A DNA stretch of 64,000 bases from Lytechinus pictus (GCF_037042905.1 NC_087262.1:16182001-16246000), one strand, 5' to 3'. Counted from the first letter of the stretch, positions 33,150-55,699 are shown. Notes: generated from the sequence alone by a model not told the origin. Made by a program: numbers and translations.

Positions 33150-33418
33150 GGCCCTGTCTTACAAAGAGTTATGATTGATCCAATCAATCGTAACTCTATG
33201 GAAATCCATCAGTGTCATAATTTTTTCTACAGGAAATTTGCAAAATGTCTTTTGTAAACAAAGGAAATCACACAAACTTGTCAAGAAATCAATGACTTTA
33301 TGGATATACACTCATATCTAGAAAATTTTAAAACAAACAGCATTTAATATGTTGACTTTGCTGGCTTTCCATAGTTGCGATTGATCAGATCAATCACAAC
33401 TCTTCGTAAGAAGGGCTC
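33150..33418. mobile_element. PIF/Harbinger-like MITE (second subfamily), TSD CAG
   Basis: CAG|GGCCCTGTCTTACAAAGAGTT ... AACTCTTCGTAAGAAGGGCTC|CAG; relatives near 15050-15285 and 39790-40038. Confidence 0.75.
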
Positions 33419-34155
33419 CAGGCCTTCGATCTAATACATCTTTGAAATGAGGATTCCAGCTTGTTTATCAAACACCACTCATGAACAGTTAACACATTTG
33501 TTTTCAGAATACCATACAAAGCAGTGCTCCATTTAGTGCTTTCCAAATACTGAAACTTGAATATAAGAAGCCACACATACAAGTAATCATAATGCAGACA
33601 TTGAATGTTTTCCATCGTTTCTCTTCAGAAAGAGCCTATAATTAAGCAAATGGATAACACTGGTTTCTATAGAGATTTGTACACATCTCTACAGAAATTA
33701 TACAGACAATAACTTGAATTGGTTTTTGCCACATTTTCACTGGAACAAGGTTAAATCGCTATAGCAACCAGGGAACTCTTAATGACCAGTGATCCAAGAC
33801 CAGGGACCCATTAAACAAAGCTCAGTAATTGATTGTAGATCAAGGTTTTACGATTGATTGTATTGACCACAAAATAAAATCAATCATGAAAGTTGACCAT
33901 ACAATCAGTCGTAAGGCTACAACTAGAATAGTTAAGTGTTTGGGAGCATTTCATGAAATAATTCAGTCAGTGGTCTTCATTGACTATTGTTAAAAGTCAC
34001 TGAAAATCCTCGAAATTGATTGGCTTAGAGCAAAGTAATCAGTGAAAATCACTGAACTATTTTCTCATGAAACACTCCCCATGGATGGATCCCTGCATCC
34101 AGGACCAAAGACGGCACCGAGCCGAGAGATGAAGAAAAGAATGATGGCTAAATAA

Positions 34156-34342
34156 TCAGTTATACTGGGGATCGATGAAGAACTTGGCATCCCCTCGATA
34201 CAAGCCTCGATCCCTGAGAATCTTAGACTTTTGGGCGTGGTCCCGGAGAAGATCCTTGAGCATGTCGTCTTTTTCCTTCTGGTCCATCTTCGCGATGAGG
34301 TCATCGTGCCATGTTCTCTCGCTAACCAGCCTCTGGATTGTT
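34156..34342 (-). CDS. Orphan gene exon 3
   Basis: TIQRLVSERTW...FFIDPQYN* (part of ORF 34156..34413). Confidence 0.85.
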
Positions 34343-37300
34343 CTGTAGAGGTTTAGGGTGGGGCAGCAAGAAGAGGGAGGTTTGGTGGGATAGGTTAGGA
34401 TGAAGGAAATCATTGAAGAAAGAAATGCCCAAAGCCTTTACTGTTTGAACTGTCAGTGGTAGCAACTGCAATACAAAACTGAATTGCTATTAACTCATTC
34501 ATCTACTCTACCAGTATACTACAATTAAGATGAAGTTTCTCATACTTCACAATGGCACTATATACACTATCATTAATTACATAAAAGCCTACAATATCAG
34601 TATATCACAATTAATATATTTTAATGATTATCATGTCAGCTGATTGATTCAGTCTTTTCTACCATACACAGGATTAAAAAGACATAAGGGGCCCATTTCA
34701 TAAAGGAATTTGATTATAATTACTTTGAAAACAATGGTAACTACCATGGTGATAGAGATCTTATCAGCTAATCAAACACAAGGTTTCCATGGCAGTTACC
34801 ATAACAACAAAGGTACTATAATCGTATGTATTTGTGAAAAGAACCCAAGAACAGTGAAAGAATGAATGTGACAATTACAAATGAAGAACGAACAGAATTT
34901 TCATGGAGATCACAAATCTAATAAAATAATGCATTTTTGTTATAAAAATAATACAATGTACTAGCATGTTCATGTGCTTGCAAGTAATAAGTTCTCATAC
35001 TGGATGTTGTATGTACATGTATGATATCACGGTCATCAAGTGGAATGTATGTACAGGTATTTGATTAATTTGAAGAAATATTGTCCATTTCAATATGAAA
35101 AATATATGCAAAGCAAATTCAAATAATCTTATAGCAAGTAGAGTGATGAAATATAAATTATACATATTAGTGTAGAAGAAGCTTGACCAAAGTCAATAAA
35201 ATGAAATTTGGGCTAGATTGATCAATTACATATTTCAATTTAAATCAATACTCAAACATAATATAATGATTGGATAAAAACATTCAGGTATTGCACTAAC
35301 TTATACAGTACAAATTGCAGGATTTGCAATAAAGTTTTGCACAACTGTAATCCACAAAATTTGTTGTTCCGCTGTCTTGAAATATTTTTTGCATTTAATT
35401 GAATTTTATGGTAGACGTAATCTATCCTTGATATAAGATCTAATCTTGTAAATGGACAGTAAGTGTCCTATGTCCTTGTTGATAATGGAATGTTCCGTTC
35501 AATGGATCAATTCTAGTTGTAAAATAATGAAAATTCACAAATTGAGAGGGATTGGAAAATAGGGTGATGGGAAAATAGAGTTATGGAAATGGTTATAAAG
35601 AAAAGAAATGAAATTAAATTGAGATATAAAAATGTATATGTATAAGGATTGAAAACAGATCAGGATATTTTTTAGCAGAGGTGATTAATTTTAAGAATGA
35701 AATGGACAAGAAAGGAGGTTCCACCATAAAGTTAAACAAATGAGTTATTAGGTGAGAAATATAAAACAGAAAGAAAAGGAATTAAAATGAACATTACATT
35801 ACGATTGTCACTTGTGTAAGGTTAGAGGAATCTGACAAAACACCTTAATTCAAACTAAGATATAATGTACTCACATATTCTATTAATTTAATCAGAAAAT
35901 AAATTAGTATTATGTGAACATAATTTGACTTAAAGGGGAATCCAGCCTTGGCCATTAAATGTTGTGTTGGGAAGGAGAAAAACTAATTAAACAGAATGGT
36001 GAAAGTTTGAAAGAAATCGGACAAGCAATAAGAAAGTTATAGCTGCTTTAAAATTGAGATCACTAATACTATGTAGATTTCAAATTGGCAACTGGATAAG
36101 TAAATTATGACAAGGGGCAAGGACAACTTTCCCATACGCCATGTACTTTATTATCAGGGATTAGTGGTTTTCTCCTAAGTACCCATTCCCCTGGGGCAGT
36201 AATCTAAATATAACCCAGGTAGTATATTGTTTTATGTCCTCATGAAAGAAAAATATTAATTTGAAATAAAACTTTTGGGAAAAATGACATTTTAGCCACA
36301 ATATGTATTGGAGTACATGGAAGAGTAGTCCTTGCCTTACATCACTATGACATCCCATATACGGCCAATTTGAAGTCTCCATGGGTATAGTGATTACCAA
36401 TATTTACAACTTTTAAAAATTCATAACTTTCTTGTTGTTTGTCCAATATTGTTCAAACTTTCACCTATCAACTTGTCTGATTTATATTTTCCTTATAAAA
36501 ACAAAGTTTTATTTGGGTTGGATTCCCCTTTAATGTTATACCACCTATCAAATCCTCATATTAAATTTTACATTGACACTTAAATACAATGATTACTGAA
36601 AACATATTTTTAGCTGTGTTTGCGATGGTGGTGTTAAGTGTCTGTCCAGACATATTGAAATACTATGTAAAAATATTACAGCACAGTCCACAAAATATGA
36701 TCACGTAGATTGTGGTAAACAATCCTTTGGCTTTTAGAATGCCAAATACTTACTGTTCTCTATCTCTGTAGGTGTTGTGGATTCCTTGTCGATCTCGTTT
36801 CTGGATCTGATCGGCGAGTTGACGTCTTCTCTCGTGATCCATCTGTCTACTCTCTAGCTGTTCCCTGGCCATGTCCTCAGAGCACGTTTCAGCCATTCTC
36901 CTCTGATTAAAAAAAAGACATAAGAGGAATCTTCTTTAATTGGTTTTAATTTTTACTTAATTCATTTATGGGGGTGCAACGTGAGAGTTCAAGTGATTAA
37001 GATAATGATATTTTGTTGATTTGTCTTTCTATTTGGGATTGAGCAGGAGATCTTTTGAAATAATAGGATGGGGGCGAGGTGTCAGGATACTTAACAATTT
37101 GGAAGCCTTTTTTTAATTTTGTCTTTAAATTACACAAAAATATGAATTCAATATCTGAATATCATCTTCAATTTTGTTATCTATGATAAATATTGATAAA
37201 ACTTTGCTTGTTAACTTTTGCAAATGGCTGTTTAAAATCGATTGTCCAGACACACAACTGGATAAATTAATTGTAACATGATTATATTCTTATTACAAAT

Positions 37301-37925
37301 ATTAGTCAAGATCTATTTTTGCAACAGCCACCCAAACTGAAACATAATATATAAGGGTTAGGGTAGCTGTCACAACAGCCACCCATACAAACTGAAACAT
37401 AATATATAAGGGTTAGGGTAGCTGTCACAAAATGAACTCTTTCCCACACCTGCATTAAGTAGTATACCCAGTTGTTGTGTGTCCGGACAGGTTGTGTGTC
37501 CGGACGATCAATTTTAGAAAGTAATTTGGAAAAATTTACAAGCGAAGTTTCATCAATTTTTAGTTCAAAATGTTAGGAAATATTAGAGAGAACAAAATTG
37601 AAGATGATTATAACTATTGAATTCATATTTTTAGTGTAATCCAAAGACAAAAAAGAAGGCTTCAAAAATATAAAGTGTCCGGACACCCGATCCCCCATCC
37701 TACATTGCTATAGCGACAATCATTTCTGTAAGCCATTCAGCCTATGACCTATGTTAAATTCGCGCACACACACACATGACATGGACATGGTCAAGCAAAA
37801 AAAAAAGCAGAATGTAAACAAACATATTTTACCTCTTCATCAGCAAATTTATTCTTAGCTGCTAATTGTCTGTCGATGACACGTTGCTTCCTTAAAGCCT
37901 CCCAGTGGTACTGTTGTTGACTCAT
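34156..37925 (-). CDS. Uncharacterised 142-aa charged alpha-helical protein, candidate ciliary/axonemal protein; exons 37925-37833, 36902-36754, 34342-34156
   Basis: AAAACAATG start context; donors GAG|GTAAAA and CA|GTAAGT; acceptors ATCAG and TACAG; phases 0 and 2 join in frame to give MSQQQYHWEALRKQRVIDRQLAAKNKFADEERRMAETCSEDMAREQLESRQMDHERRRQLADQIQKRDRQGIHNTYRDREQTIQRLVSERTWHDDLIAKMDQKEKDDMLKDLLRDHAQKSKILRDRGLYRGDAKFFIDPQYN*. Exons are GC-richer than the flanking introns. Confidence 0.85.
35934..36529. mobile_element. Kolobok-like MITE (AGGGGAATCC family)
   Basis: TTAA|AGGGGAATCCAGCC ... GGGTTGGATTCCCCT|TTAA. Confidence 0.85.
36754..36902 (-). CDS. Orphan gene exon 2
   Basis: RRMAETCSEDMAREQ...YRDRE; donor GTAAGT. 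Confidence 0.85.
37322..37429. repeat. Tandem duplication, ~52-bp unit x2
   Basis: CAACAGCCACCC...AAACTGAAACATAATATATAAGGGTTAGGGTAGCTGTCA repeated. Confidence 0.85.
37833..37925 (-). CDS. Orphan gene exon 1
   Basis: MSQQQYHWEALRKQRVIDRQLAAKNKFADEE; donor GTAAAA. Confidence 0.8.
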
Positions 37926-38041
37926 TGTTTTAATTTAATGATGAATGATATTATGCCGATTAAAGGTGGAAATTAATGCCCTGATCGATCCTGTCCACAT
38001 CAGATCGAGTTGCTGGCGAGCTTCCGGGTTCTGCTTGGGTA

Positions 38042-38055
38042 CTCGCTATGGCAAC
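38042..38055. promoter_or_regulatory. RFX X-box-like motif upstream of the orphan gene
   Basis: CTCGCTATGGCAAC matches 13/14 positions of GTNRCYATRGYAAC, about 120 bp upstream of the ATG; NRF1/P3A2-like GCGCATGCG at 38065-38073 nearby. Confidence 0.55.
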
Positions 38056-38932
38056 GTGATTATAGCGCATGCGTAGAGAAGTCGATCTCGATAACAAGGG
38101 TAAAGAACTTCGGCAACAGGCTATGTGCGTTGAGGCGAGGCAGAATAGAAAGTGGTATTACGAGGGTGGGGCCGGAATTTGGGGTGGAATAACACGCCAG
38201 GCCTGGGATGGAGTTAGGGTGCTTGAAGGTGTTTTATATTCAGCAGATCGAAAAATGGGAAGATATGCTGAACTAAGAATAAATTGGTGTTACAATGTTC
38301 TTGGGGTATAGGGCAGGCATGTCATGCTGCTTTTGTGGAGTCCAGATGGTCGCCGCAGGGGGTCATATAGAAAGAGAGGGGCGCCATTCTGGATTGGAGG
38401 CAAACATCCAAAGGTGCCCACCTGTATTTGGGGGAGGGGGCTCTGTAAAAATGGTAATTGGGGTCATACTCATATTTTTTTCCAGGGGATGCAGGGGTTA
38501 AACTTTTTTTTTTTGACAGGGCATTATTAGCGAAATTGAAGGATTTGGTTCACAATTTTGGTGAAATTAAAGATTTTTAGCAAAATCGTGTAACTTTTCT
38601 TAATTTGGGGTTCGGGGATCGGGAGGGCAACTGAACCACGGCATATCCATATAGCTACATCGGAGGAGCAAACTTATTTGACCTTCCCCTCCATTTCACT
38701 TTGCTATGATAAAAACAATATAACTTGCTTAAGATATGATGCCAAGAAAGATGACAGTAATTCTTTGATGTAAAAAAAAGTGTGCCTCCTTTAAAAATAT
38801 ACAAGGAACACCGCGACGAATGAGATTTTGTTTTCATGCTAAAGTTCGCGTTTTGGAGAACCTATTTGTTTATTTTACAAGGTTGTAATACTTTTATTTC
38901 TTGCCACGGGCAGGCATTTTATTTTACAATAA

Positions 38933-45046: not shown

Positions 45047-48000
45047 CTGAAAGAGGCATAAACAAATTTGACAATACATATAACAAATGAATTAGAAGAG
45101 GTGATTAAACAATGTGAATAATTAGTAGAATATCACTGCCAAATCATGGCCGCCATGAAAGAGGAACAAATTACTAAGAAAATTCCAGATATAGGATTGG
45201 TTTTTCAAAGACACTGCAACCACAAAGGGAAATTTCTAAATTCTATTTTCAATACTACAGAAAAAATTCTCACAAAAATAGGAATGCACGGGTTAAAATG
45301 GCAATTCTGTCTCCCTAAACGGGAATGTTCAGTCAATATGAACACTCGGTAGGCATGCCCTGATGCAATGATTTGTCTAACAGATGTTACAAAAAAACAT
45401 GGAGGGCAAGGGGTCTTGCACCCATGCCCCTGCCCCCATGATCTTGGCCAATTAATGGACGTTTGCGACGAAAATGAGGACTCGTGTGATTCACCTGCAG
45501 CTTAATCTAATTTATTGAGTAGTCAAAAGCTCCCCCTAAAATCATTATTGTGATAGTTCAGACATGAAAATATTCACCTTTGCCCTCTTCTGCTTGAGGA
45601 TGTTTTCTACTGGCTCAGCATCATCAAATACAATGAAACCGAAGTATGGTAGCTTGGGTCCAGAGTTACGGTTTATCCTCGTGTCAACAACTCTGCCATA
45701 TTCTGCATTGGATGTAATAATATAACCTTCATGTTACAAAGATGAACATATATGTATAATTATACTGTCATAGATCAAGATGTTTGTCATATCGAAGCCA
45801 TCAGAGATTATGAAAAGACAAGATTTGAAGAAACAATTGAACATAAATACATAATAACAACAGTAAAGATCTGAGGCATGAATGTAATACTTAAACAGGA
45901 GTTAAAATAATTTTTTCAAGTCTTGTGACACTTTTGGTATCCAGTTTATGAAAATCAGAAAAGGGTCCGGATTATTTTTATTATATCGGATGAAGTGACC
46001 CTGCAAGGTTTCAGCACCTGTCAAATTTTGCAGTAATTTGGTGATAAAACCTATTGTATAGATCAAAATAGTTTGACAAACCTGAGAAAAAACTCCTGAG
46101 TTCTTTGTCAGTGATGTCCTGCGGCAGGTTGCCGACGAAGAGTTGATGGCTATCTGGGAATCTTGCAGATGATGGCCCCCTTCCCTTGTCAAGCCCATCC
46201 TCAAATCCACGCCTTCCACCACCGCTGCCTCCTCCACCTCCTCCAGCACCACCAGCAGGACCTGGTCCACCAGTCATGCCAGGGTTAGGGCCAGGACCAG
46301 CACCCATCCTTTCTTGGACTCGACGATCCCTTCCCTTGGGTTCCCTCTGAGGGAGGACCTCTTTGCCCCTGGGTGGGGGGTCGCGGGAAAGGGTGGTCAT
46401 GCCTCCGATGGGCTCACTCGGCTTGGGTGCTACTACCTGGCTCTGAAATATAACACAAGTATAAGCCCCTTGATTATCTTCCTTTAAATAGAGCTACCAG
46501 TAAAATGGCACAAGTTATCTATTCCTAACATTTTGTAGGTCATTTATTTACTTTAAAACTATTCAGTGTTTTTAATGTTTAATAAGGTTTTAATGAATTA
46601 TATGCACCCAATTAATAACAATCAACATAAACAAAAGATTACATGCAACTGCTGCCTCTTTTGTAGCAATTTACAACGGTCCAGTTTAATATAAGCAAAA
46701 TAGAAAGATACAAATACAATCAATCTTAAAATGAATTTTTGTAGCAATTTACAACGGTCCAGTTTAATATAAGCAAAATAGAAAGATACAATCAATCTTA
46801 AAATGAATCATAACTATTTATGCTTGCACCAGACCTAACATATGATCCATAGTATTTTAGGCACCTTGTCAATAGAACCACAAGGTCTGGGGTTCAAATC
46901 CCACTTCAGCACCAGCGTCCTTTGGCAAGGCGTTTATCTACATTTGCCACTCTTAACCAAGGTGTAGCAAATGGGTACCCGGTAGGAAGGAATTCCTTGA
47001 ATGCTCGGTGCGCCTGATCAGGGTAGCCGTGCTAAAGCTGGGGTAATAGTATGCAGTGCTTAGCATTTGTATCAAGTGCTATATAAATGTTGCATATTAT
47101 CATTATTACTAATCATCAGTCCTCATATACAAAATCATGTGTACTACAGGAAAGCCGCGACGAGAAGACGCATAGCATCCTAACAGCGGGATTGCTGCTT
47201 AAAGACATGGCACAGACTTTTGACAAGTTTCCTCATAAGGTGCGGAGAAGACTGACTCACCGGTGCTGCCATGGGTTTGCTTGCCAAACCAGAGTTTGGA
47301 GCCGTCTGTCCTCTGGCTCTCTCGGCCCATGAGAATGTCTTGGGTGCTATGAGAAATAATAAATATTGAATGTATAGCTATATACACTAAATACCTGTCC
47401 TTAACTTTTTAGTACAGTTTCAATAATAGGATTAATACTGTACTATTATACATATAATAATAGGAGTGGGCTATACATGGGTCAAAAATACTTTTTTTGT
47501 AATTTCAATATGACAACAGTTTTTTTTCATTCCTTGTAATGTATCTCAACATGAAATGACAATATTTTTTGTCTCGGGTCCGAGAAAAAAGTGTGCCGGG
47601 CCAAAATCCAAAATGGCCGCCAAAACCCCCCAAAATCACAGTTTTGGCCACAACTTTTTTATTTGGTGGTCAATTTCTCTGGTTTTGGTGTCTATTCATA
47701 TGTTTTGGGGGGCAGGCAATTTGTTTTTCCTATAATTAGTACTTTTAAACCATTATTTGTAGAGTTAAAAGGTAATTATACCTAAATTTTCCCATTTTTG
47801 TAGCCTTTTTTCAGCCAAAAAGTAGGTTTTATCATCCTGGGGTTCTGGGATATTAGATGGTACGAGGTCAACAATAGCAAGCAGCTTCATATAGCTATAT
47901 TGCCTTTATTCCTCCACTTTGGGTTTGACGGATATTTGTGAAATATATCTTATTAAATAAAACAATGTCAATTATCCATTGGGGCTATACAGTATACATA

Positions 48001-51000
48001 TGTATGATATGTACAATGTACTGTACATACATACTGCACTGCATAAATGCATTGGCCACCATGACAGATAACAAGGCTTGTATAAACTATAGTGTCATAG
48101 AAATGAGCTCTCAGGTTTAGAATTAGATGCCTCAGAAATTGAAGATATGTTTTGTCTCAGAAATTGAGGACATGTTTTGTCAAATATGCTAATTCAGGGG
48201 GCGGAGAGAGGTAATTTACACTGTAGCTATTCTGGGCCCCGTTGCATAAAAAATTACCATTATGTTAACTTAACTTAATGGTAACTTGCATGCAATCCTT
48301 TATTCTGATTGGCTGTTGATCAGCGTTACCATGATACTAGTAGTTACCTGACCCCATAAACATAGGCCAGTTAGACACCAGAACCAGGTTTTAAAAAAAG
48401 CCTCCAAATGAAGAAGATATGGCTAAAAATGTGATGTACGTATATATGTATGTATGTGTAATTTACGTTGCTGGTTTCACCATGTACATCAGCTGACAAG
48501 GAATCAAATTCACAATCTAATTCTAAACCTTTGAAGCTCATTTCTATGACACTATAGTTTATGTACAGGCCTTGTCATAATTATGCCATGGTGGTCAATG
48601 CATGGATATATGCAGTGTAGTATGTACAGTGCATTGTACACCGTATAGCCCCTATGGATAAATGACATTTTCTTTTATTTGATAAGATATATTTCACAAA
48701 TATCCGTCAAACCCAAAGTGGAGGAATAAAAGCAATATAGCTATATGAAGCTGCTTGCTATTGTTGACCTCGTACCATCTAATATCCCAGAACCCCAGGA
48801 TGATAAAACCTACTTTTTGGCTGAAAAAGGGCTACAAAAATGGGAAAATTTAGGTATAATTACCTTTTAACTCTACAAATAATGGTTTAAAAGTACTAAT
48901 TATAGGAAAAACAAATTGCCTGCCCCCCAAAACATATGAATAGACACCAAAACCAGAGAAATTGACCACCAAATAAAAAAGTTGTGGCCAAAACTGTGAT
49001 TTTGGGGGGTTTTGGCGGCCATTTTGGATTTTGGCCCGGCACACTTTTTTCTCGGACCCGAGACAAAAAATATTGTCATTTCATGCTGAGATAAGGTAAA
49101 AGGAACACAAAAAAACTGTTGCCATAGTAAAACCAAAAATCACCCATTTATAGCCCACTCCTAATTAATAATAGCATATTTAATATTATTTCAGAGCTTT
49201 ATATAATTATACATTTTTAACATTCCAAATCTTACTTCTTCTCTCACAGAGTGCTTAAATTGTGGAAAGAATGACAAAAAGAGGTAGTCTTGGCTCCTTT
49301 AATAAACTCCTTCAAGAACGGACTAGACAAACACTGGAAAATCCACTTACATTCTTTAGTGCCAAAGGAGAGAAATACTCAATTTGAAATTATGAAGTTG
49401 TATTTCCATTCTTCCATTATCGCAACAAAACATGACAGACTAATAGATATCCCAGATAGCAATGCTACCTTGCAACTACCACAGTAGGCAAAGACATTGA
49501 CATAACTTGAACGCCATTACTCCATTCACATATTGCAGAAATTTTCAAGCTCAGGTATAAATAAGAAGCAAGCATTCCTGCCCTACTTACTGTTATCGAC
49601 AGGCTCCTCCACGGGGGCCTGCTTCTCCACCTCCACCTGCTCCACCTGATGGTTCTCTTCAGGAGGCGGAGTAGGAGGCCCGACAGGCTGCAGGTTGAGG
49701 GAAGGATCTTCCATCTCCATCTGAGGCTCCGGTGAGAAGCTTTCTACCTCCGGCGCCGCAGTCTTGATGGGGGTATCTTCAGGCGACTCTGGATGAGTTG
49801 ACCCATTGCTGTCAGGGGAGGAAAGACACAAGAAGATTACGTGGCTTGTCAAATGGTTCATTGAACCGAAGATCGACCATCAGAAGTGTACAAAACATTT
49901 TCTATTTATCTTTGGTTTTAAATTTAGTTCAATCCAACAAATGTAGAGTGCAGCATCACTTTGCAGTTTTGCTATTAGGAAGGTCCACTCGATACTATTA
50001 TGGTAACTTTGCCATACAATGGTAACAACCATGGTAACACTGATCACCAACCAAACAAAATCAAGTATTCCAGACAAGTAACCATTTGATGGCAAGGTTA
50101 CCATAATGGTAACTTTCATGCAGTGGGGCCCTGGTCAGAAAAACTACTCCATCTTTGATATGGGAGGTTGGCTTATGAAGCCTCTACAAGCTGTAGTTGT
50201 AGTTATTGTACTTATTTGCAGTTACTTCAACCGTACAGAATATATTGTGACATGGTCTTACCTCACAGGAGGCTGGGGCTCATAGTAAGATGGAGTAACC
50301 TGGGGTTGCGGGGGTGGTTCCTTAGGGATGATGGCCAGTTCTGGGGTGGTGATCCTCTGCTGCTGTTCTGCAACCATGCGGATCTCCTCACGACCACCAT
50401 CAGAATCACCTACATTGTACACAAGAAAAATAGTTCTGGTTGGAAAATTTGTCCTAGGCGTTGATGCAATAACGAGGAATGCTTGAATTTGTGACCTTTG
50501 TGCTCTACATCTCAAATCTCATAACTTCAATAACACATGCTCATATAGACTACCCACCATCCAAAGTTTGGTTAAATCACTTTGTAGCATTTTTGTGACC
50601 CCCTAACCTTCAGATTGGGGACATCAAAAAATGGCACTGAGCCTCACTGAAAATGGACCTGAGAACATATCAACCAAATTTAGGCATGCACAACCAAATG
50701 AACACTCAATAACTTATAAGCAAATATTCTCTAAATGGAAGATATACTAGAGGTTCCATTGCCTCGTTCATTCACAGAACCATGAACAAAACCACAGGGA
50801 ATAATTTTCCTGGTACATTATCGCAAGTTGCTCCACATTTCTCAATGACACACAAAATGCTACGCAAAGTTTTTTCTATGTAACAATTTTTTTTACACAG
50901 GACTGTACAAAACATTGTTTAGTTAATGCCTTCCTCTTGCAAACAGAAATGCAAATCGAGTTTGAGGGGTAAAATTATCCCCTGGAACCAACCACAGTTT

Positions 51001-54000
51001 GTCTAAATAATGTCATGAAAACCACCAAGAGGGCTGTAGCATGCAGGAGAAATCCCACACTGATCCTGTACTTTCCAATCCCTATTGACTTACATTCAAC
51101 AGGGAGCTCGGGTTCACTCTCCGTCTCGTCATCCTGGAACACCTCGTCCTGGTAGCGGAAGATGTCGTTTCGCACAAAGTATTTCTTCGCTGCCTGGGGC
51201 GCCAGCACGAAGGTCTGCATGAAGCGGCGCATGGGCTCCCCATTATTGGATAGCTCTCCAGTCACCTGCACGACGACACCTTCCCCTACCGTGCCGTGGC
51301 TGTCGACCTGCCGGATCTTGGCATGACAGTCACGGAAGTTCAGTGACACGATCTTAGCATGGATGGCCTGCAACAAGTGGACAAGTAAATGAGATTATTA
51401 TACCACTGAATTAATGTATGCTTCAAACTCGTTCTTAAACTAAATGGTAAATCACCTTAAATCTCCGTCCACACTAGACCTGACACTTGACATCCTTTTT
51501 TTTTTTTTAAACAGTGGTTCTTTACCCAGAATCAAAATGATTTGAACACATCTCATCAAATCAAACAAGCTAGACAGAAAATTCATCAAAAAAGGATAAG
51601 ACAGCTTTTGGGATTAAAGTCTCGCCATACATTATTTGGGAAATTGAAATGGAAGTGAGTGAGCCGAGGTCATAGGCTCACTCGTTTGTATTTATTTCAT
51701 TTCCAACATGTGAAAGATAATAAACACACCTCCTGGCCATAAACAGGATCCTCCGGGTTCCCATCAGGGTCTACTCCTCCATGCACGAATGATGATGCAT
51801 TCGTGTAGAACCTACATGGAAAAGACAAGACACACAGAAACAATTTATGTATTAATGTTGGTGACTAGCTAAGCAAAGTCGATCAAGACCACAGCATTGT
51901 CATGGCCTATTCAGTCACCCTGTCACTAAGAAAACATTGCTGATTTCCATGACAACCATTTAAAGTAAAATAACACACCATAACATGATCATATGACACA
52001 TTCTTTTCAAGGTAGAGGATTATGAACAAGACAACAGGAGGCCATTCTCAGGTTTTCTAAACAAATATAACCCATCAATCTACACTGGAAAAGAAAACTG
52101 ATATTAGACTAAGGATACTAGGCTAAGGAGGCAACCCAAGTAAAAACTATTAATATTATGAATCATCTGAACATCACATACATGCATTGCAGGGGCAGGA
52201 ATGCAGGGGGTACCACCCCCCCCCCCCTTAAAGATGTGAAAAGAGGTAAGGGGGAATTGGACTAACCAAAATAGACGTTTGAGTTGTCTAACTTTAATAC
52301 CCATATTAAACAAATAACAATAAAATGACCAGGGCCCTGTTGTATAAAAGTTACTATCATAGTAACTTTGCTATCAAATGGAAACTACCCTGAAATCCTT
52401 GATTCTGACTGGCTATTGAGTATTGTTACCATGGTAGTTACCATTGGAAGGCAAAGCTACCATAGTAACTTTTGTGCAATGGGGCCCAGATCATCAGTAC
52501 TCTTGTATGACCAAAATAGAAAGTTGATCCATCTGACAGTTCTCCTGTTAATATATAACAGGACAGGCAACCTTTTCAACACTTTTCCAGAAACCTTGGT
52601 CGGGTGGACATGAACCCCCCCCCCCCCAAAAAAAAAAAAAAAACTCCACACACCTCACCTAAGGATCAACATCTCAATATAATAATGAACCAGCAACAAG
52701 TATTTTGCTAGTCATATTGCAAAATTTCAATGCAAAGAATAACAATCTTTTATTACCTGCAAAGAAATTTATCACAAAATAGTTCAAAACATGATTCTCC
52801 AATTAATTTACACAGAACTCTTTTATATTTACTGCTCCCAAATTTCGGAATTCCCTTCCCCTGAATACGAGAGAGAGCTTAACAGTCAGACTGCAGGTCC
52901 CAAGAAAGAGGCTTCTTTCATCCAAGTGATATTCATGACTTGAGATGTTTTGCATATTTAATGAGCTTGATGCGGACCAAAACACCTCTTTTCATTCGGT
53001 CATTGCTGCTCTAATTATGCATCGAATTTCATGAATTTGGTACCATTGTAAAGAAGAAGAATCATTCTTTCAGGTCATGTGTTTGGATTTATTCAAAGAT
53101 TTTGTAAAATAGGTTAAAATTTTGATCTAAAATATGCTACAAAATAAATATTTTCACCTGACAAAAGCTGCTATTTTCACACTTTATTTTTGTTTGAGCC
53201 CAAATGATTTTTATATCATGATAAAGCTGAATATGTATGCTTTGAAATGATATAGGTTTCAAAATAAGAATTGGTTTAATCGGGTCAAGATCACACTTTT
53301 CATTTGCCAAGTACATAAAGCAGCTTGAAAACAAGTATACTGCACTCTGATTGGTCAAAAAGACCACACAATGGCAAATTCCAACGGTTCCAGTGCCTGG
53401 GTTCGTGGGAAGGTCACACTTCCCATGTGGTAATCTCCTCAAATACCCCGCGCCTGTTGTTCTGTGAACCTTATCCAGCCAATCAGAACTCTGGATTTCA
53501 TGCAAGTACAAAATTTCAGAAATCTCGTCTTGTACCTTGGTGGGAAAAGTGTGATCTTGACCCGATTAAAAGGTGCCGCATATCAAGAGTGGCATTGTGA
53601 GAAAGTACAGAAGTTTAGCTTTATGGTGATATAGATATCATTGAGGCTCAAAATAAAAAGTTTTGCACAATTTGCAAAAGAAAACAGAGGAAGAAAATTC
53701 AGTTTTGAGGCACAATTTCAGGCCAGAAATGTACTTATTTAACAAAATATTGTATACAAAATAAATGACCAATATGAAAGAGTAACTTTTACTCTATCTG
53801 ATGGTGCAATAATATTTCATTTAACTTGAGGTTAAAACAGGTAAATTCTTAGAGAAAGAAAATCTCACGAATCACGAGATTTTGCAAGGAGGAGGATTCA
53901 GCCACGAGATGATTTGGATGAATCTGGCCTTTTTGCTCATTAGCATAGGGACCTGCGGTCTGACTGTTAAGTATAGGTACATTTAAATTTAAAGTTAAAA

Positions 54001-55210
54001 AATCACTACTTGCCTCCTACTCACTAATCCTACAGATCCCACCTCCCACCGACCCCTTTCCCCCACTCCCATTTCCTTATTTGTCTTTTCCTTATCGTTA
54101 TTTGTATCTTATACTTTCTCCTTGCCCCCCGTCCATTGTTCTTTTTTCCATCTGTGACCATGCATTTATCTTCCACACTTTCAGCGATTATCCTCCTATT
54201 TACGTTCCTTTGATTTGAATGATCATTTACAAAGTTCACATTATATTACGTTATTTACATTATTTTTGTATTCAAGAGATCAGCGTCCAACAAGCCAAGC
54301 TTCTCAGCTGGTCTCTCTTTTTATTTCACCCCTTTCTTTTTATTTTAACACACACGCGAATACTCATACTTTTTAGAATGTTTAGCTTTATAAAATGATG
54401 ATATAAATATTGTATTTTGTTCGTATAATTTACATTACCCAATTTTTGCAAATGTAAGGTCATTACTTTTGTTCATTTTTGTTTGTAATTGTATTTATTT
54501 TTTATTTATTTGTGAAAAATGGAAAGAAAAGAAATGGAATAAATCAATTCAAATTCAAATTAAAAGTAACGAACCTCTTAAATTTTTTTTTTTAAATTGT
54601 CTTTTGGGGGTTTATTACCATTCAGATTGCACAAAATCTTTTATTTCCTCTTTATTACCAACTACAACGTTGATTGTTTTGTCTCCTTGTAAATTGAACA
54701 GCAGTATTTGTAGAGCTCGAAAAGGAAGACTTTTATTAGAAAAAAGTGCATTTCTAAATCCAACCTTTAATGCATACAGTGACACGATATATGTACATAA
54801 AGAACCCCCATTATAACCATTGCCTACATTAAACCTTTACTATTATATGTCCAATTGGCACAAAAAATGGAATTTACATTTGAATCCCAAATGACATAAA
54901 ATTTCATGTTCTAATATATTTACAAATACAATGCAATCAAAGCCTTTTGAAAATATAATTCCATTGCTCATTCTATCTTGTCCCTTAATGAAAACAAATA
55001 TCAGCCTGACAATTACCTATGCAAGTGTTTGGGCGCCTTGTTGAGTAGAGTGTAGTATTGTCGCACAAACTCTCTTCCTACTGACTGGGGGGTGACGTTG
55101 TTGACGGGGGCAGTAGGGTTGGGTCCTTGAGCAGAGTTTGGCGGGTTTGTAGGAGCCGCTGTGGCCGGAGCAGGCTGAGGCGCAGCCGGAGGATTGGTGG
55201 CCATTACCAT
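44831..55210 (-). CDS. G3BP: Ras GTPase-activating protein-binding protein (G3BP1/2, Rasputin ortholog), 567 aa; exons 55210-55017, 51811-51730, 51367-51094, 50409-50262, 49808-49591, 47346-47261, 46442-46082, 45702-45578, 45046-44831
   Basis: NTF2-like domain ([14 protein letters not shown]...[11 protein letters not shown]...[11 protein letters not shown]), acidic/Pro-rich IDR, KTFSWA motif, RRM (QLFVGNLP; YFGFIVF; RLNVEEKK), RGG tail. All splice phases consistent; total 1704 nt. Confidence 0.96.
45578..45702 (-). CDS. G3BP: G3BP exon 8 (RRM RNP1)
   Basis: [41 protein letters not shown]. Confidence 0.94.
46082..46442 (-). CDS. G3BP: G3BP exon 7
   Basis: SQVVAPKP...[26 protein letters not shown]. 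Confidence 0.93.
46659..46808. repeat. Tandem duplication, ~75-bp unit x2
   Basis: TTTTGTAGCAATTTACAACGGTCCAGTTTAATATAAGCAAAATAGAAAGATACAA...TCAATCTTAAAATGAAT repeated. Confidence 0.9.
46871..47110 (+). mobile_element. 5'-truncated tRNA-derived SINE
   Basis: GGTTCAAATCC B box, CCAAGGTGTAGCAAATGGGTACCCGG core, (ATT)n tail. Confidence 0.75.
47261..47346 (-). CDS. G3BP: G3BP exon 6
   Basis: [13 protein letters not shown]...MAAP; donor GTGAGT. Confidence 0.9.
47463..49161. mobile_element. Foldback-type element with ~650-bp TIRs, TA-flanked
   Basis: TA|GGAGTGGGCTATA ... TATAGCCCACTCC|TA; mirrored identical ORFs 47591..47785(+) and 48850..49044(-). Confidence 0.88.
49235..49440 (+). mobile_element. 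CR1-like LINE 3' fragment
   Basis: Degenerate translation FSHRV..LW....[19 protein letters not shown], typical of the CR1 ORF2 C-terminus. Confidence 0.7.
49591..49808 (-). CDS. G3BP: G3BP exon 5
   Basis: [13 protein letters not shown]...PVEEPVDN; donor GTAAGT. Confidence 0.88.
50262..50409 (-). CDS. G3BP: G3BP exon 4
   Basis: [11 protein letters not shown]...YYEPQPPV; phase 1 in, phase 2 out, matching both neighbours. Confidence 0.85.
51094..51367 (-). CDS. G3BP: G3BP exon 3
   Basis: [24 protein letters not shown]...[25 protein letters not shown]. Confidence 0.95.
51730..51811 (-). CDS. G3BP: G3BP exon 2
   Basis: [27 protein letters not shown]. Confidence 0.94.
52333..52486. mobile_element. 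PIF/Harbinger-like MITE, TSD CAG
   Basis: CAG|GGCCCTGTTGTATAAAAGTTAC ... GTAACTTTTGTGCAATGGGGCC|CAG. Confidence 0.75.
52810..54562 (+). mobile_element. CR1/L2-like LINE 3' fragment split by the 1084-bp element
   Basis: FIFTAPKF(R)NSLPLN.RESL|[14 protein letters not shown] reads across the insertion; 3' stem GAGATCAGC...GCTGGTCTC, AATAAA and (AATTCA)n tail. Confidence 0.65.
52883..53966. mobile_element. Second copy (opposite orientation) of the 1084-bp CAG...CTG element, TSD TTAA
   Basis: TTAA at 52879-52882 and 53967-53970; roughly 10 substitutions versus 11255-12338 (counted by eye). Confidence 0.92.
55017..55210 (-). CDS. G3BP: G3BP coding exon 1
   Basis: MVMATNPP...[21 protein letters not shown]; acceptor AG at 55221-55222; donor GTAATT. 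Confidence 0.93.
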
Positions 55211-55699
55211 GACTGTACCACTGCAGAAAATATGAAAAGTAAAATAATATATTTGTACCTGTACATGTATATAACTTATCACACAAGTTGTTATCACTGA
55301 AAGAAAACAATCATAAGAGAAACATGTTGTGAGATAATGAATGAAAAGGTTCAAATAACAAGAGGGGGGGGGGGGTACGTGGGCGAGGTGAGGGGGAAGG
55401 GATTTGCAATCCTCTCAATTATTTATCATCAGCTCTTATCAAATTTTATAACATGGGGTCATTTGGAGGGCAGGGATTCCACATGTAGCTGTATGGGATA
55501 TCATTTACCACATGAGAGGACAGGGCAACAGATTGTTCACAGATTCAAGACAACATGTATTGATCAGTATGTATAATGTACATGTACAGAAATGAGTATC
55601 AAATGTGTACTCAATTAATTTGAATGAGTTTAGTTTCAATGTAAACAATGTACTTCATTGAAAAAATGAATTGGAAATTCAGTATTTTTTCATTAATTA

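What the first reader, a model, noticed from the sequence alone, without database searches (positions are those of the whole stretch)
34156..38075. Unrecognised 142-aa three-exon gene with an RFX X-box: candidate new ciliary/axonemal protein
Seen in sequence: three exons with canonical splice sites and matching phases encode a highly charged, helix-prone protein with no recognisable domain. The ORF track shows only its last exon. A near-consensus X-box (38042-38055) and an NRF1-like site lie 120-150 bp upstream of the ATG, outside any repeat I can see. Established: RFX X-boxes mark cilia genes, and many microtubule inner proteins are short charged helices. Inference: by eye, KFADEERRM and DLLRDHAQKSKILRDRGLYR loosely resemble the MNS1 C-terminal segments KFAEDDRI and KLLKEHATNLLGYLPKGVFK. 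It may be a miniature MNS1/TPH-related microtubule inner protein.
Basis: partly seen in the sequence, partly recalled or inferred. Interest (0 to 1): 0.75.

Follow-up and report, generated by a model that had tools for sequence, protein, structure and literature searches.

The report
Sea urchin SPMIP13 sperm-microtubule protein gene

Summary
Exons 37925-37833, 36902-36754 and 34342-34156 (minus strand) splice into a 142-aa ORF. It is identical to NCBI "uncharacterized protein LOC135157473" of Lytechinus pictus. Stranded RNA-seq reads confirm both junctions exactly.

The protein has no Pfam family and is predicted to be mostly one long helix. Its S. purpuratus orthologue (79% identical, E about 1e-81) is chains 1o/1p of PDB 8SNB, the sea urchin sperm doublet-microtubule model. 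Two papers that cite or appear to reproduce Leung et al. 2023 call it SPMIP13. They list a 48-nm repeat, protofilaments B02-B06, and built residues 2-31 and 96-141. So it is a known microtubule inner protein.

The proposed MNS1/TPH kinship is not supported. There is no TPH hit, hhalign probability is 0.25%, and a separate real MNS1 gene exists. The PDB copy's "MNS1" label for this chain looks like a mislabel.

The X-box core GTTRCCATRG lies upstream of the ATG in all six echinoderm orthologues examined.

New here:
- The family reaches hemichordates and a sea anemone.
- A conserved alternative last exon gives a minor short isoform, which NCBI calls "CCDC200-like" in Ptychodera.

The parts
37833..37925 (-). 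Exon 1 coding part (Met1 to Glu31). It holds the conserved N-terminal motif YHWEA..Q..D.
   Evidence: Junction 36902/37833 has 31/20/76 reads. Conservation.
37926..38010 (-). 5' UTR; the upstream end is approximate. Reads cover 37970 and 37983, and depth is zero from 38076 upward.
   Evidence: Depth bins, the SNP at 37970 and the indel at 37983. The start site was not mapped precisely.
36754..36902 (-). Exon 2 (residues 32-81; the last codon is split after 2 nt). It encodes the variable, highly charged middle of the helix.
   Evidence: Segment conservation is lowest for residues 32-65.
34156..34342 (-). Exon 3 coding part plus stop (residues 81-142). This is the most conserved segment: WH..I..M ... 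DH..K.K.LR..G.YRG...F.D..Y.
   Evidence: It corresponds to built residues 96-141 of the S. purpuratus protein in 8SNB.
33400..34155 (-). 3' UTR of at least about 750 nt. The 3' end was not reached, because the laid stretch began at 33400.
   Evidence: Same-strand RNA depth of 6-30 continues down to 33400.
35441..35512 (-). Alternative last exon, coding part plus stop (acceptor AG at 35514-35513). Spliced to exon 2, it replaces the SPMIP13 C-terminus with Q-IDPLNGTFHYQQGHRTLTVHLQD-stop, giving a short isoform of about 105 aa. Its UTR runs to about 35082.
   Evidence: Junction 35512/36754 has 2/3/5 reads plus one X1 contig, about 4-9% of the main junction. Translation. The exon is conserved in L. 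variegatus, S. purpuratus, Diadema and Patiria. It matches the C-termini of hemichordate isoforms P0028 and P0026.
38042..38055 (-). X-box-like site GTTGCCATAGCGAG. The left half-site and centre are perfect; the right half-site has 2 mismatches.
   Evidence: The core GTTRCCATRG is on the gene strand in all six orthologous promoters, five of them at -129 to -146.
38065..38073 (.). NRF1-like palindromic core CGCATGCGC.
   Evidence: Only occurrence in the 64-kb window. Conserved in L. variegatus and S. purpuratus, not found in Diadema or the starfish.
38021..38027 (-). ETS-like CCGGAAG inside a conserved block AACCCGGAAGCTCG, just upstream of the transcribed region.
   Evidence: Promoter alignment. 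Exact in L. pictus and S. purpuratus; CCGGAAA in L. variegatus.

Best explanation
This is the L. pictus orthologue of SPMIP13 (sperm microtubule inner protein 13; S. purpuratus LOC105439830, UniProt A0A7M7NFX5). It is a single-copy three-exon gene. The main product is a 142-aa, highly charged, mostly helical protein. In S. purpuratus it sits on the luminal wall of the B-tubule of sperm flagellar doublet microtubules, across protofilaments B02-B06, once per 48-nm repeat. Shown, in the sister species: only residues 2-31 and 96-141 are ordered on the lattice. Shown here: these ends are better conserved than residues 32-65, while residues 66-95, also outside the built ranges, are as conserved as the N-terminus. 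The very C-terminus (126-142) is the most conserved part, yet it is predicted disordered when folded alone. Inferred: the two ends are tubulin-binding anchors that fold on the lattice. The charged central helix is a flexible spacer. By bridging several protofilaments the protein would help stiffen the B-tubule against bending, as other filamentous inner proteins are thought to do. Inferred: transcription comes from a TATA-less promoter whose conserved X-box core places it in the RFX motile-cilia programme. Shown here: a minor, conserved alternative last exon makes a short isoform that lacks the C-terminal anchor.
For: Gene model and identity to LOC135157473. Exact spliced, stranded reads. Orthologue in 8SNB: family profile against PDB gives chain 8snb_1o, 142 aa, E 1.1e-81, aligned 1-142 to 1-142. 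Cluster look-up ties XP_030835825 / A0A7M7NFX5 to 8SNB_1o and 1p. Name, periodicity, protofilaments and built residues: Table 1 of PMC11834534. PMC12808527 states that SPMIP11L, SPMIP12 and SPMIP13 were found in sea urchin sperm by Leung et al.. Single copy in the genome. Gene order G3BP-like then this gene is shared with S. purpuratus. Conservation by segment, as mean frequency of the commonest residue: 0.67 for 1-31, 0.52 for 32-65, 0.67 for 66-95, 0.71 for 96-141 and 0.77 for 126-142. pLDDT is 42-51 at the C-terminus. X-box core in 6 of 6 promoters against a background of 0.066 per 600 bp. A conserved promoter block is shared by Lytechinus and Strongylocentrotus.
Against: Lumenal location was shown for S. 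purpuratus sperm, not L. pictus. I could not read the primary paper (Leung et al. 2023, PMC10948200, not held), so structural details come from secondary sources. One of these lists 'A-tubule' in one column and B02-B06 in another. The PDB copy labels the chain 'Meiosis-specific nuclear structural protein 1', which conflicts with the SPMIP13 name. The tissues of the RNA runs are coded, so testis or ciliary specificity of expression is not shown. The full 14-mer X-box has two mismatches and no RFX binding data exist here. The stabilising role is an inference, and knock-outs of several mammalian SPMIPs have mild phenotypes.
Confidence: 0.88

Rival explanations
1. It is a miniature paralogue of MNS1 (TPH family), occupying an MNS1-like position near the A-tubule seam. 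This was the first reader's reading, and it is what the PDB label of chain 8snb_1o suggests.
For: The PDB copy names 8snb_1o 'Meiosis-specific nuclear structural protein 1'. Both proteins are charged helical inner proteins. MNS1 does carry KFEEDDRI and LLKEHASKLLGFLPK near its C-terminus, loosely like KFADEERRM and LLRDHAQKSKILRDRG here.
Against: No TPH (PF13868) hit at E<=10. hhalign of the family profile against the MNS1 C-terminal exon gives 0.25% probability over 6 aligned columns. Profiles of 9 and 16 family members find no MNS1, CFAP53 or CFAP141 chain in the PDB at E<=10, not even 8snb_2R, the true 499-aa MNS1 of the same entry. A protein search of the genome finds no paralogue. The two motifs are 85 residues apart here and 68 apart in MNS1. 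The literature table gives different protofilaments: A08-A11/B01 for MNS1 and B02-B06 for SPMIP13.
Confidence: 0.04
2. The gene's main role is not axonemal. It would be a general coiled-coil protein, possibly the invertebrate counterpart of vertebrate CCDC200, and its presence in sperm doublets would be one use of one isoform.
For: A conserved alternative last exon yields an isoform without the lattice-bound C-terminus. NCBI names the matching Ptychodera isoform 'CCDC200-like'. Homologues exist in a sea anemone. The promoter also carries NRF1-like and ETS-like sites typical of broadly expressed genes.
Against: The SPMIP13 isoform accounts for over 90% of junction reads in three runs. Its C-terminus is the best-conserved part of the family. 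The X-box core is conserved across echinoids and asteroids. Other NCBI '-like' names in this family (trichohyalin-like, CAF-1 rlf2-like, CLK4-associating SR-like) are plainly compositional artefacts, so 'CCDC200-like' may be one too. The Atlas searches listed only cnidarian and mollusc clusters, no CCDC200-named cluster.
Confidence: 0.07
3. It is not a real gene: a chance arrangement of ORFs and splice-like sites.
For: None after testing.
Against: Exact spliced reads in three raw-read RNA runs plus a contig set, a RefSeq model, 142-aa orthologues across echinoderms and hemichordates, and a solved structure of the orthologue.
Confidence: 0.01

Closest known systems
SPMIP13 of Strongylocentrotus purpuratus (LOC105439830, UniProt A0A7M7NFX5, PDB 8SNB chains 1o/1p)
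   Same: Same length (142 aa), 79% identity over the full length, same three-exon gene, same upstream neighbour (G3BP-like), same promoter block with NRF1-like core, X-box core and ETS-like site, and the same alternative last exon.
   Different: A different species. Lumenal location has not been shown in L. pictus. NCBI still calls both genes 'uncharacterized'.
MNS1 / CFAP127 (TPH family, PF13868)
   Same: Charged, helical, filamentous microtubule inner protein with a 48-nm repeat, present in the same 8SNB model. The PDB copy gives both the same molecule name.
   Different: MNS1 is about 495-499 aa, carries a TPH domain and lies at A08-A11/B01. This protein is 142 aa, has no TPH signal, lies at B02-B06 and shows no detectable sequence kinship.
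Other B-tubule inner proteins with a 48-nm repeat (CFAP45, CFAP210, SPMIP1, CFAP144)
   Same: Same compartment and periodicity in the sea urchin table. SPMIP1 and CFAP144 are likewise built as separate stretches.
   Different: No sequence similarity was found in PDB profile searches. Those proteins have vertebrate orthologues of known name, whereas SPMIP13 is reported as sea-urchin-specific.
Vertebrate CCDC200 (function unknown)
   Same: Small coiled-coil protein. NCBI names the Ptychodera short isoform of this gene family 'CCDC200-like'. CCDC200 is said to be conserved from sharks to humans with almost nothing known of its function.
   Different: Mammalian CCDC200 is 168 aa and glutamine-rich. 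Local gene order does not recall the human CCDC200 neighbourhood (G3BP-like and DnaJ here; TMEM106A and BRCA1 in human).

Membership tests
SPMIP13 (sperm microtubule inner protein 13) | Full-length, colinear sequence match to the protein modelled in the sea urchin sperm doublet (8SNB chains 1o/1p) | tested here: met
   Profile E 1.1e-81, aligned 1-142 to 1-142. 79% identity without gaps. Chain identity confirmed by cluster look-up.
SPMIP13 (sperm microtubule inner protein 13) | Orthology rather than paralogy: single copy and conserved gene neighbourhood | tested here: met
   Only the three exons of this locus match in the 812-Mb assembly. A G3BP-like gene lies upstream on the same strand in both L. 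pictus and S. purpuratus.
SPMIP13 (sperm microtubule inner protein 13) | The gene is transcribed and spliced as modelled | tested here: met
   Both junctions are confirmed exactly in three stranded RNA runs.
SPMIP13 (sperm microtubule inner protein 13) | Physical location on the B-tubule lumen (B02-B06, 48 nm) in this species | not testable with these tools
   Known only for S. purpuratus and only through secondary sources. The primary paper is not held.
MNS1 / TPH family (PF13868) | TPH domain detectable by the Pfam profile | tested here: not met
   No TPH hit at E<=10 for four echinoid orthologues, and none at E<=1 for five further family members (crinoid, hemichordate and cnidarian). The same profile finds the real MNS1 and a second TPH gene in this genome.
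MNS1 / TPH family (PF13868) | Profile-level similarity to the MNS1 C-terminal region | tested here: not met
   hhalign probability 0.25%. Family profiles hit no MNS1 chain in the PDB at E<=10, whereas the MNS1 exon hits nine distinct FAP127/CFAP127/MNS1 chain sequences from ciliate and green alga to mammals, including 8snb_2R.
MNS1 / TPH family (PF13868) | MNS1 position in the doublet (A08-A11/B01) | tested here: not met
   The literature table gives B02-B06 for SPMIP13. This was read, not computed.
RFX-regulated motile-cilia genes (X-box promoters) | A 14-nt X-box matching GTNRCCNNRGYAAC close to the start site | tested here: inconclusive
   Two mismatches, both in the right half-site. Sites that good occur 0.52 times per 600 bp in this window.
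RFX-regulated motile-cilia genes (X-box promoters) | Evolutionary conservation of the site in orthologous promoters | tested here: met
   The core GTTRCCATRG is on the gene strand in 6 of 6 species: -129 to -146 in five, -257 in Diadema. Background is 7 sites per 64 kb on both strands. It lies in a conserved block between Lytechinus and Strongylocentrotus.
RFX-regulated motile-cilia genes (X-box promoters) | RFX binding and dependence of expression on RFX | not testable with these tools
   No ChIP, ATAC or knock-down data were available.
CCDC200 | Significant sequence similarity to vertebrate CCDC200 | not tested
   Only an NCBI product name for Ptychodera isoform X3. No vertebrate sequence could be fetched. 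The Atlas searches listed no CCDC200-named cluster among their top rows.

The most novel reading that the evidence does not exclude
SPMIP13 is not a sea-urchin-specific invention. It would be one isoform of an old metazoan gene, present in echinoderms, hemichordates and cnidarians, and perhaps molluscs, that makes two proteins with alternative conserved C-termini. The short isoform (ending ...FHYQQGH.T...) would correspond to vertebrate CCDC200, a protein of unknown function. That would predict a ciliary or sperm microtubule-associated role for CCDC200. The first half (wider range, two conserved isoforms) is shown here. The CCDC200 orthology is untested and is the part to which the probability refers.
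Probability: 0.3. Interest if true: 0.5.

Novelty: already known. Interest (0 to 1): 0.27.

Why it matters
For the scan, this is a clean positive control. A reader working from raw sequence alone found a small, unnamed gene and correctly predicted that it encodes a microtubule inner protein. Biologically the core finding is already established by the 2023 sea urchin sperm doublet structure.

What this check adds is modest but usable:
- The RefSeq entries in Lytechinus, Strongylocentrotus, Diadema, starfish, brittle star, crinoids and hemichordates can be named SPMIP13.
- The PDB molecule name "MNS1" for 8SNB chains 1o/1p is not backed by sequence.
- The family is older than "sea urchin-specific" implies. 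It spans Ambulacraria and has a cnidarian homologue.
- The gene has a deeply conserved alternative last exon, so it makes a second isoform without the lattice-bound C-terminus.
- A conserved X-box core gives a testable regulatory link to RFX in L. pictus. From general knowledge, not tested here, this urchin is used for CRISPR genetics.

Tried and rejected
- Pfam on the three exon pieces and on nine family members found nothing above threshold.
- Foldseek against the PDB gave no match. VIA-align wide gave only tied long-helix matches at Z<=7.9, as expected for a single helix and uninformative.
- The exhaustive HMMER search of 1.84 billion representatives with a four-urchin profile gave six hits. 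Five are family members or fragments. The sixth is a weak match (E 4.4e-4) in six stretches to a 2323-aa protein that I did not examine.
- The primary paper (Leung et al. 2023) could not be read by DOI or PMC id.
- A paper search for the accessions gave one review, and a search for peptide motifs gave nothing relevant.
- Papers on CCDC200 gave no functional or sequence information.
- The Atlas searches returned only cnidarian and mollusc clusters without ids, so these remain untested leads.
- Exact look-ups of the Ptychodera and Actinia proteins found no contig, so their neighbourhoods are unknown.
- An X-box scan 2 kb upstream of an early MNS1 exon, meant as a comparator, found none at <=1 mismatch. 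The true first exon was not located, so this says nothing.
- The sequencing-run index could not tell tissues. The about 0.15 word share in organism-B runs probably reflects the abundant intronic repeat, not the gene.
Full report
**1. What is in the sequence**

On the minus strand, three segments with canonical GT..AG borders join in phase into 429 nt, which is 142 codons plus a stop:
- 37925-37833
- 36902-36754
- 34342-34156

The product is identical to P0001, NCBI "uncharacterized protein LOC135157473 [Lytechinus pictus]". So the window is L. pictus, and the gene model already exists in RefSeq without a name.

I laid three stranded raw-read RNA-seq runs and one contig set on 33400-38400.
- Junction 34342/36754 has 25, 29 and 116 reads.
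- Junction 36902/37833 has 31, 20 and 76 reads.
- All of these reads have the first mate on +, which fits a minus-strand RNA.
- Same-strand coverage continues below the stop codon to at least 33400, so the 3' UTR is at least about 750 nt.
- Upstream, reads cover 37970 and 37983 and depth is zero from 38076. The start site therefore lies roughly at 37990-38070.
- The two fixed differences from the reference inside exon 3 (34258, 34294) are both synonymous.

**2. What the protein is**

No Pfam family reaches threshold. AlphaFold2 predicts one long helix (3-99), a second helix (102-125) and a low-confidence tail, at mean pLDDT 87.

A profile of four urchin orthologues searched against all PDB chain sequences gives one hit. 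It is 8snb_1o, 142 aa, E 1.1e-81, aligned end to end. The cluster look-up shows that XP_030835825 / UniProt A0A7M7NFX5 (S. purpuratus LOC105439830) is the sequence of 8SNB chains 1o and 1p. 8SNB is the 48-nm repeat of the sea urchin doublet microtubule.

A review table that appears to reproduce the structure paper's list of sea urchin proteins gives this entry: [quoted passage not shown] (PMC11834534). A second paper states that Leung et al. found three SPMIPs specific to sea urchin sperm: SPMIP11L, SPMIP12 and SPMIP13 (PMC12808527).

The review's localisation column says "A-tubule" while the protofilament column says B02-B06, and the row sits among B-tubule proteins. I take B-tubule as intended, but I could not check the primary paper, which is not held.

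The gene is single-copy in the 812-Mb assembly. A G3BP-like gene (NTF2 plus RRM) lies upstream on the same strand both here (about 46.0-55.4 kb) and in S. purpuratus. Orthology is therefore secure.

**3. How it probably works**

Shown for the sister species: the protein is a luminal B-tubule component with a 48-nm repeat, and only its two ends are ordered.

Shown here, in a 16-sequence alignment, as the mean frequency of the commonest residue:

| Residues | Conservation |
|---|---|
| 1-31 | 0.67 |
| 32-65 | 0.52 |
| 66-95 | 0.67 |
| 96-141 | 0.71 |
| 126-142 | 0.77 |

The two built ends are better conserved than residues 32-65. However, residues 66-95, which also lie outside the built ranges, are as conserved as the N-terminus. 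So the match between conservation and the ordered parts is only partial. The last 17 residues (G.YRG...F.D..Y) are the most conserved part, yet they are predicted disordered in isolation.

Inference:
- The N-terminal helix and the C-terminal segment are tubulin-binding anchors that fold on the lattice.
- The charged middle is a flexible spacer.
- Spanning B02-B06 would tie several protofilaments together. This is the stabilising role usually proposed for filamentous inner proteins.
- No functional test exists for SPMIP13.

**4. The MNS1 idea**

The PDB copy labels 8snb_1o "Meiosis-specific nuclear structural protein 1". The same entry also holds a genuine 499-aa MNS1, chain 2R. The L. pictus MNS1 exon matches that chain at E 3e-42, and it also matches MNS1/FAP127 chains from mammals, Chlamydomonas and Tetrahymena.

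SPMIP13 shows no TPH signal. hhalign against the MNS1 C-terminal exon gives 0.25% probability. Family profiles of 9 and 16 members hit no MNS1, CFAP53 or CFAP141 chain at E<=10.

MNS1 sits at A08-A11/B01. I therefore reject membership of the MNS1/TPH family and regard the PDB molecule name as a labelling slip. "Works like a filamentous inner protein" stands.

**5. The promoter**

The 14-mer at 38055-38042 has a perfect left half-site and centre (GTTGCCATAG) and two mismatches in the right half. Sites that good occur 0.52 times per 600 bp here, so by itself it is not evidence.

Conservation changes this. An alignment of the 330 bp upstream of the ATG in L. pictus, L. variegatus and S. purpuratus shows a conserved block:

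CGCATGCGCT..CACGTTGCCATAGCGA...AACCCGGAAGCTCG

The core GTTRCCATRG is present on the gene strand in all six promoters examined:

| Species | Distance from ATG |
|---|---|
| L. pictus | -130 |
| L. variegatus | -135 |
| S. purpuratus | -139 |
| Acanthaster | -129 |
| Patiria | -146 |
| Diadema | -257 |

The background is 7 sites in 64 kb on both strands. The NRF1-like core is unique in the window and is conserved only among the three camarodont urchins. RFX control is thus well supported as a hypothesis, but it is not shown.

**6. Additions beyond the literature I could read**

(a) Phyletic range. 142-aa homologues occur in echinoids, asteroids, an ophiuroid, crinoids and hemichordates. A 120-aa protein of the sea anemone Actinia tenebrosa matches the family profile at hhalign probability 98.2%, E 5e-14, through both the N-terminal and C-terminal motifs. 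The Atlas points to cnidarian (120 aa) and mollusc (111 aa) clusters, which remain untested leads.

(b) An alternative last exon.
- A minor junction 35512/36754 has 2, 3 and 5 reads plus one contig. That is about 4-9% of the main junction.
- It joins exon 2 to an exon that ends the protein with IDPLNGTFHYQQGHRTLTVHLQD.
- The same exon is conserved in L. variegatus, S. purpuratus, Diadema and Patiria.
- It matches the C-termini of the annotated short isoforms of Ptychodera (P0028) and Saccoglossus (P0026).
- The gene therefore makes a second, deeply conserved isoform that lacks the lattice-bound C-terminus.

(c) A possible link to CCDC200. NCBI names the Ptychodera short isoform "CCDC200-like". 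Vertebrate CCDC200 is described as conserved from sharks to humans with almost nothing known of its function (bioRxiv 10.1101/2025.11.08.687349). I could not obtain any vertebrate sequence, and other NCBI "-like" names in this family are clearly compositional. I give this link about 0.3.

**7. Verdict**

The protein is already known as SPMIP13. Interest is therefore low to moderate. It rests on the wider distribution, the conserved second isoform and the untested CCDC200 link.

Noticed in passing
window 35929-36540 (intron 2, both strands): A repeat of about 600 bp with internal inverted arms (35998-36056 / 36407-36465 and 36059-36089 / 36364-36394). Both ends read TTAAAGGGGAATCCA, which looks like a MITE-type transposon with TTAA at its ends. 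RNA depth is very high on both strands (hundreds of reads; contig depth up to about 90,000). Many reads run off its ends into unrelated sequence, so it is a multi-copy, transcribed element.
   Followed up: partly
window 37070-37703 (intron 1): A second foldback-like element. Inverted arms lie at 37161-37188 / 37581-37608, with a 51-nt tandem duplication (37325-37375 and 37380-37430) between them. The part at 37408-37741 has RNA on both strands, and reads run off at 37462 and 37703.
   Followed up: partly
window about 46000-55400, minus strand: Exons of a G3BP-like gene: NTF2 domain at 50978-51376 and 55016-55354, and RRM at 46014-46400. It lies upstream of SPMIP13 on the same strand. The same order (NTF2+RRM gene, SPMIP13, DnaJ gene) is seen in S. 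purpuratus.
   Followed up: partly
PDB 8SNB chains 1o/1p versus 2R: In the PDB copy searched, the 142-aa SPMIP13 chain and the true 499-aa MNS1 chain carry the same molecule name. The shorter chain's name is not supported by any sequence comparison.
   Followed up: yes
Ptychodera flava isoforms P0021, P0027, P0028: The hemichordate gene has three annotated isoforms that share the first 80 or so residues. They differ in the last exon: an SPMIP13-type end, a second divergent SPMIP13-like end (…LRDHGVFNGPHTY…) and the short FYQQGH end. This suggests a duplicated 3' exon in that lineage.
   Followed up: no
window 37983 and 37970 (5' UTR): A 4-base deletion at 37983 appears in a minority of reads (about 20-30%) in all three RNA runs. 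An A>T difference at 37970 is fixed in two runs and heterozygous in the third. These are ordinary polymorphisms relative to the reference individual.
   Followed up: no
G000:C3:11588558-11594996 and G000:C8:9749572-9753450: Two TPH-domain genes lie elsewhere in the L. pictus genome. The C3 gene is the real MNS1: its C-terminal exon matches 8snb_2R at E 3e-42. The C8 gene was not identified and could be CFAP53 or a trichoplein-like gene.
   Followed up: partly
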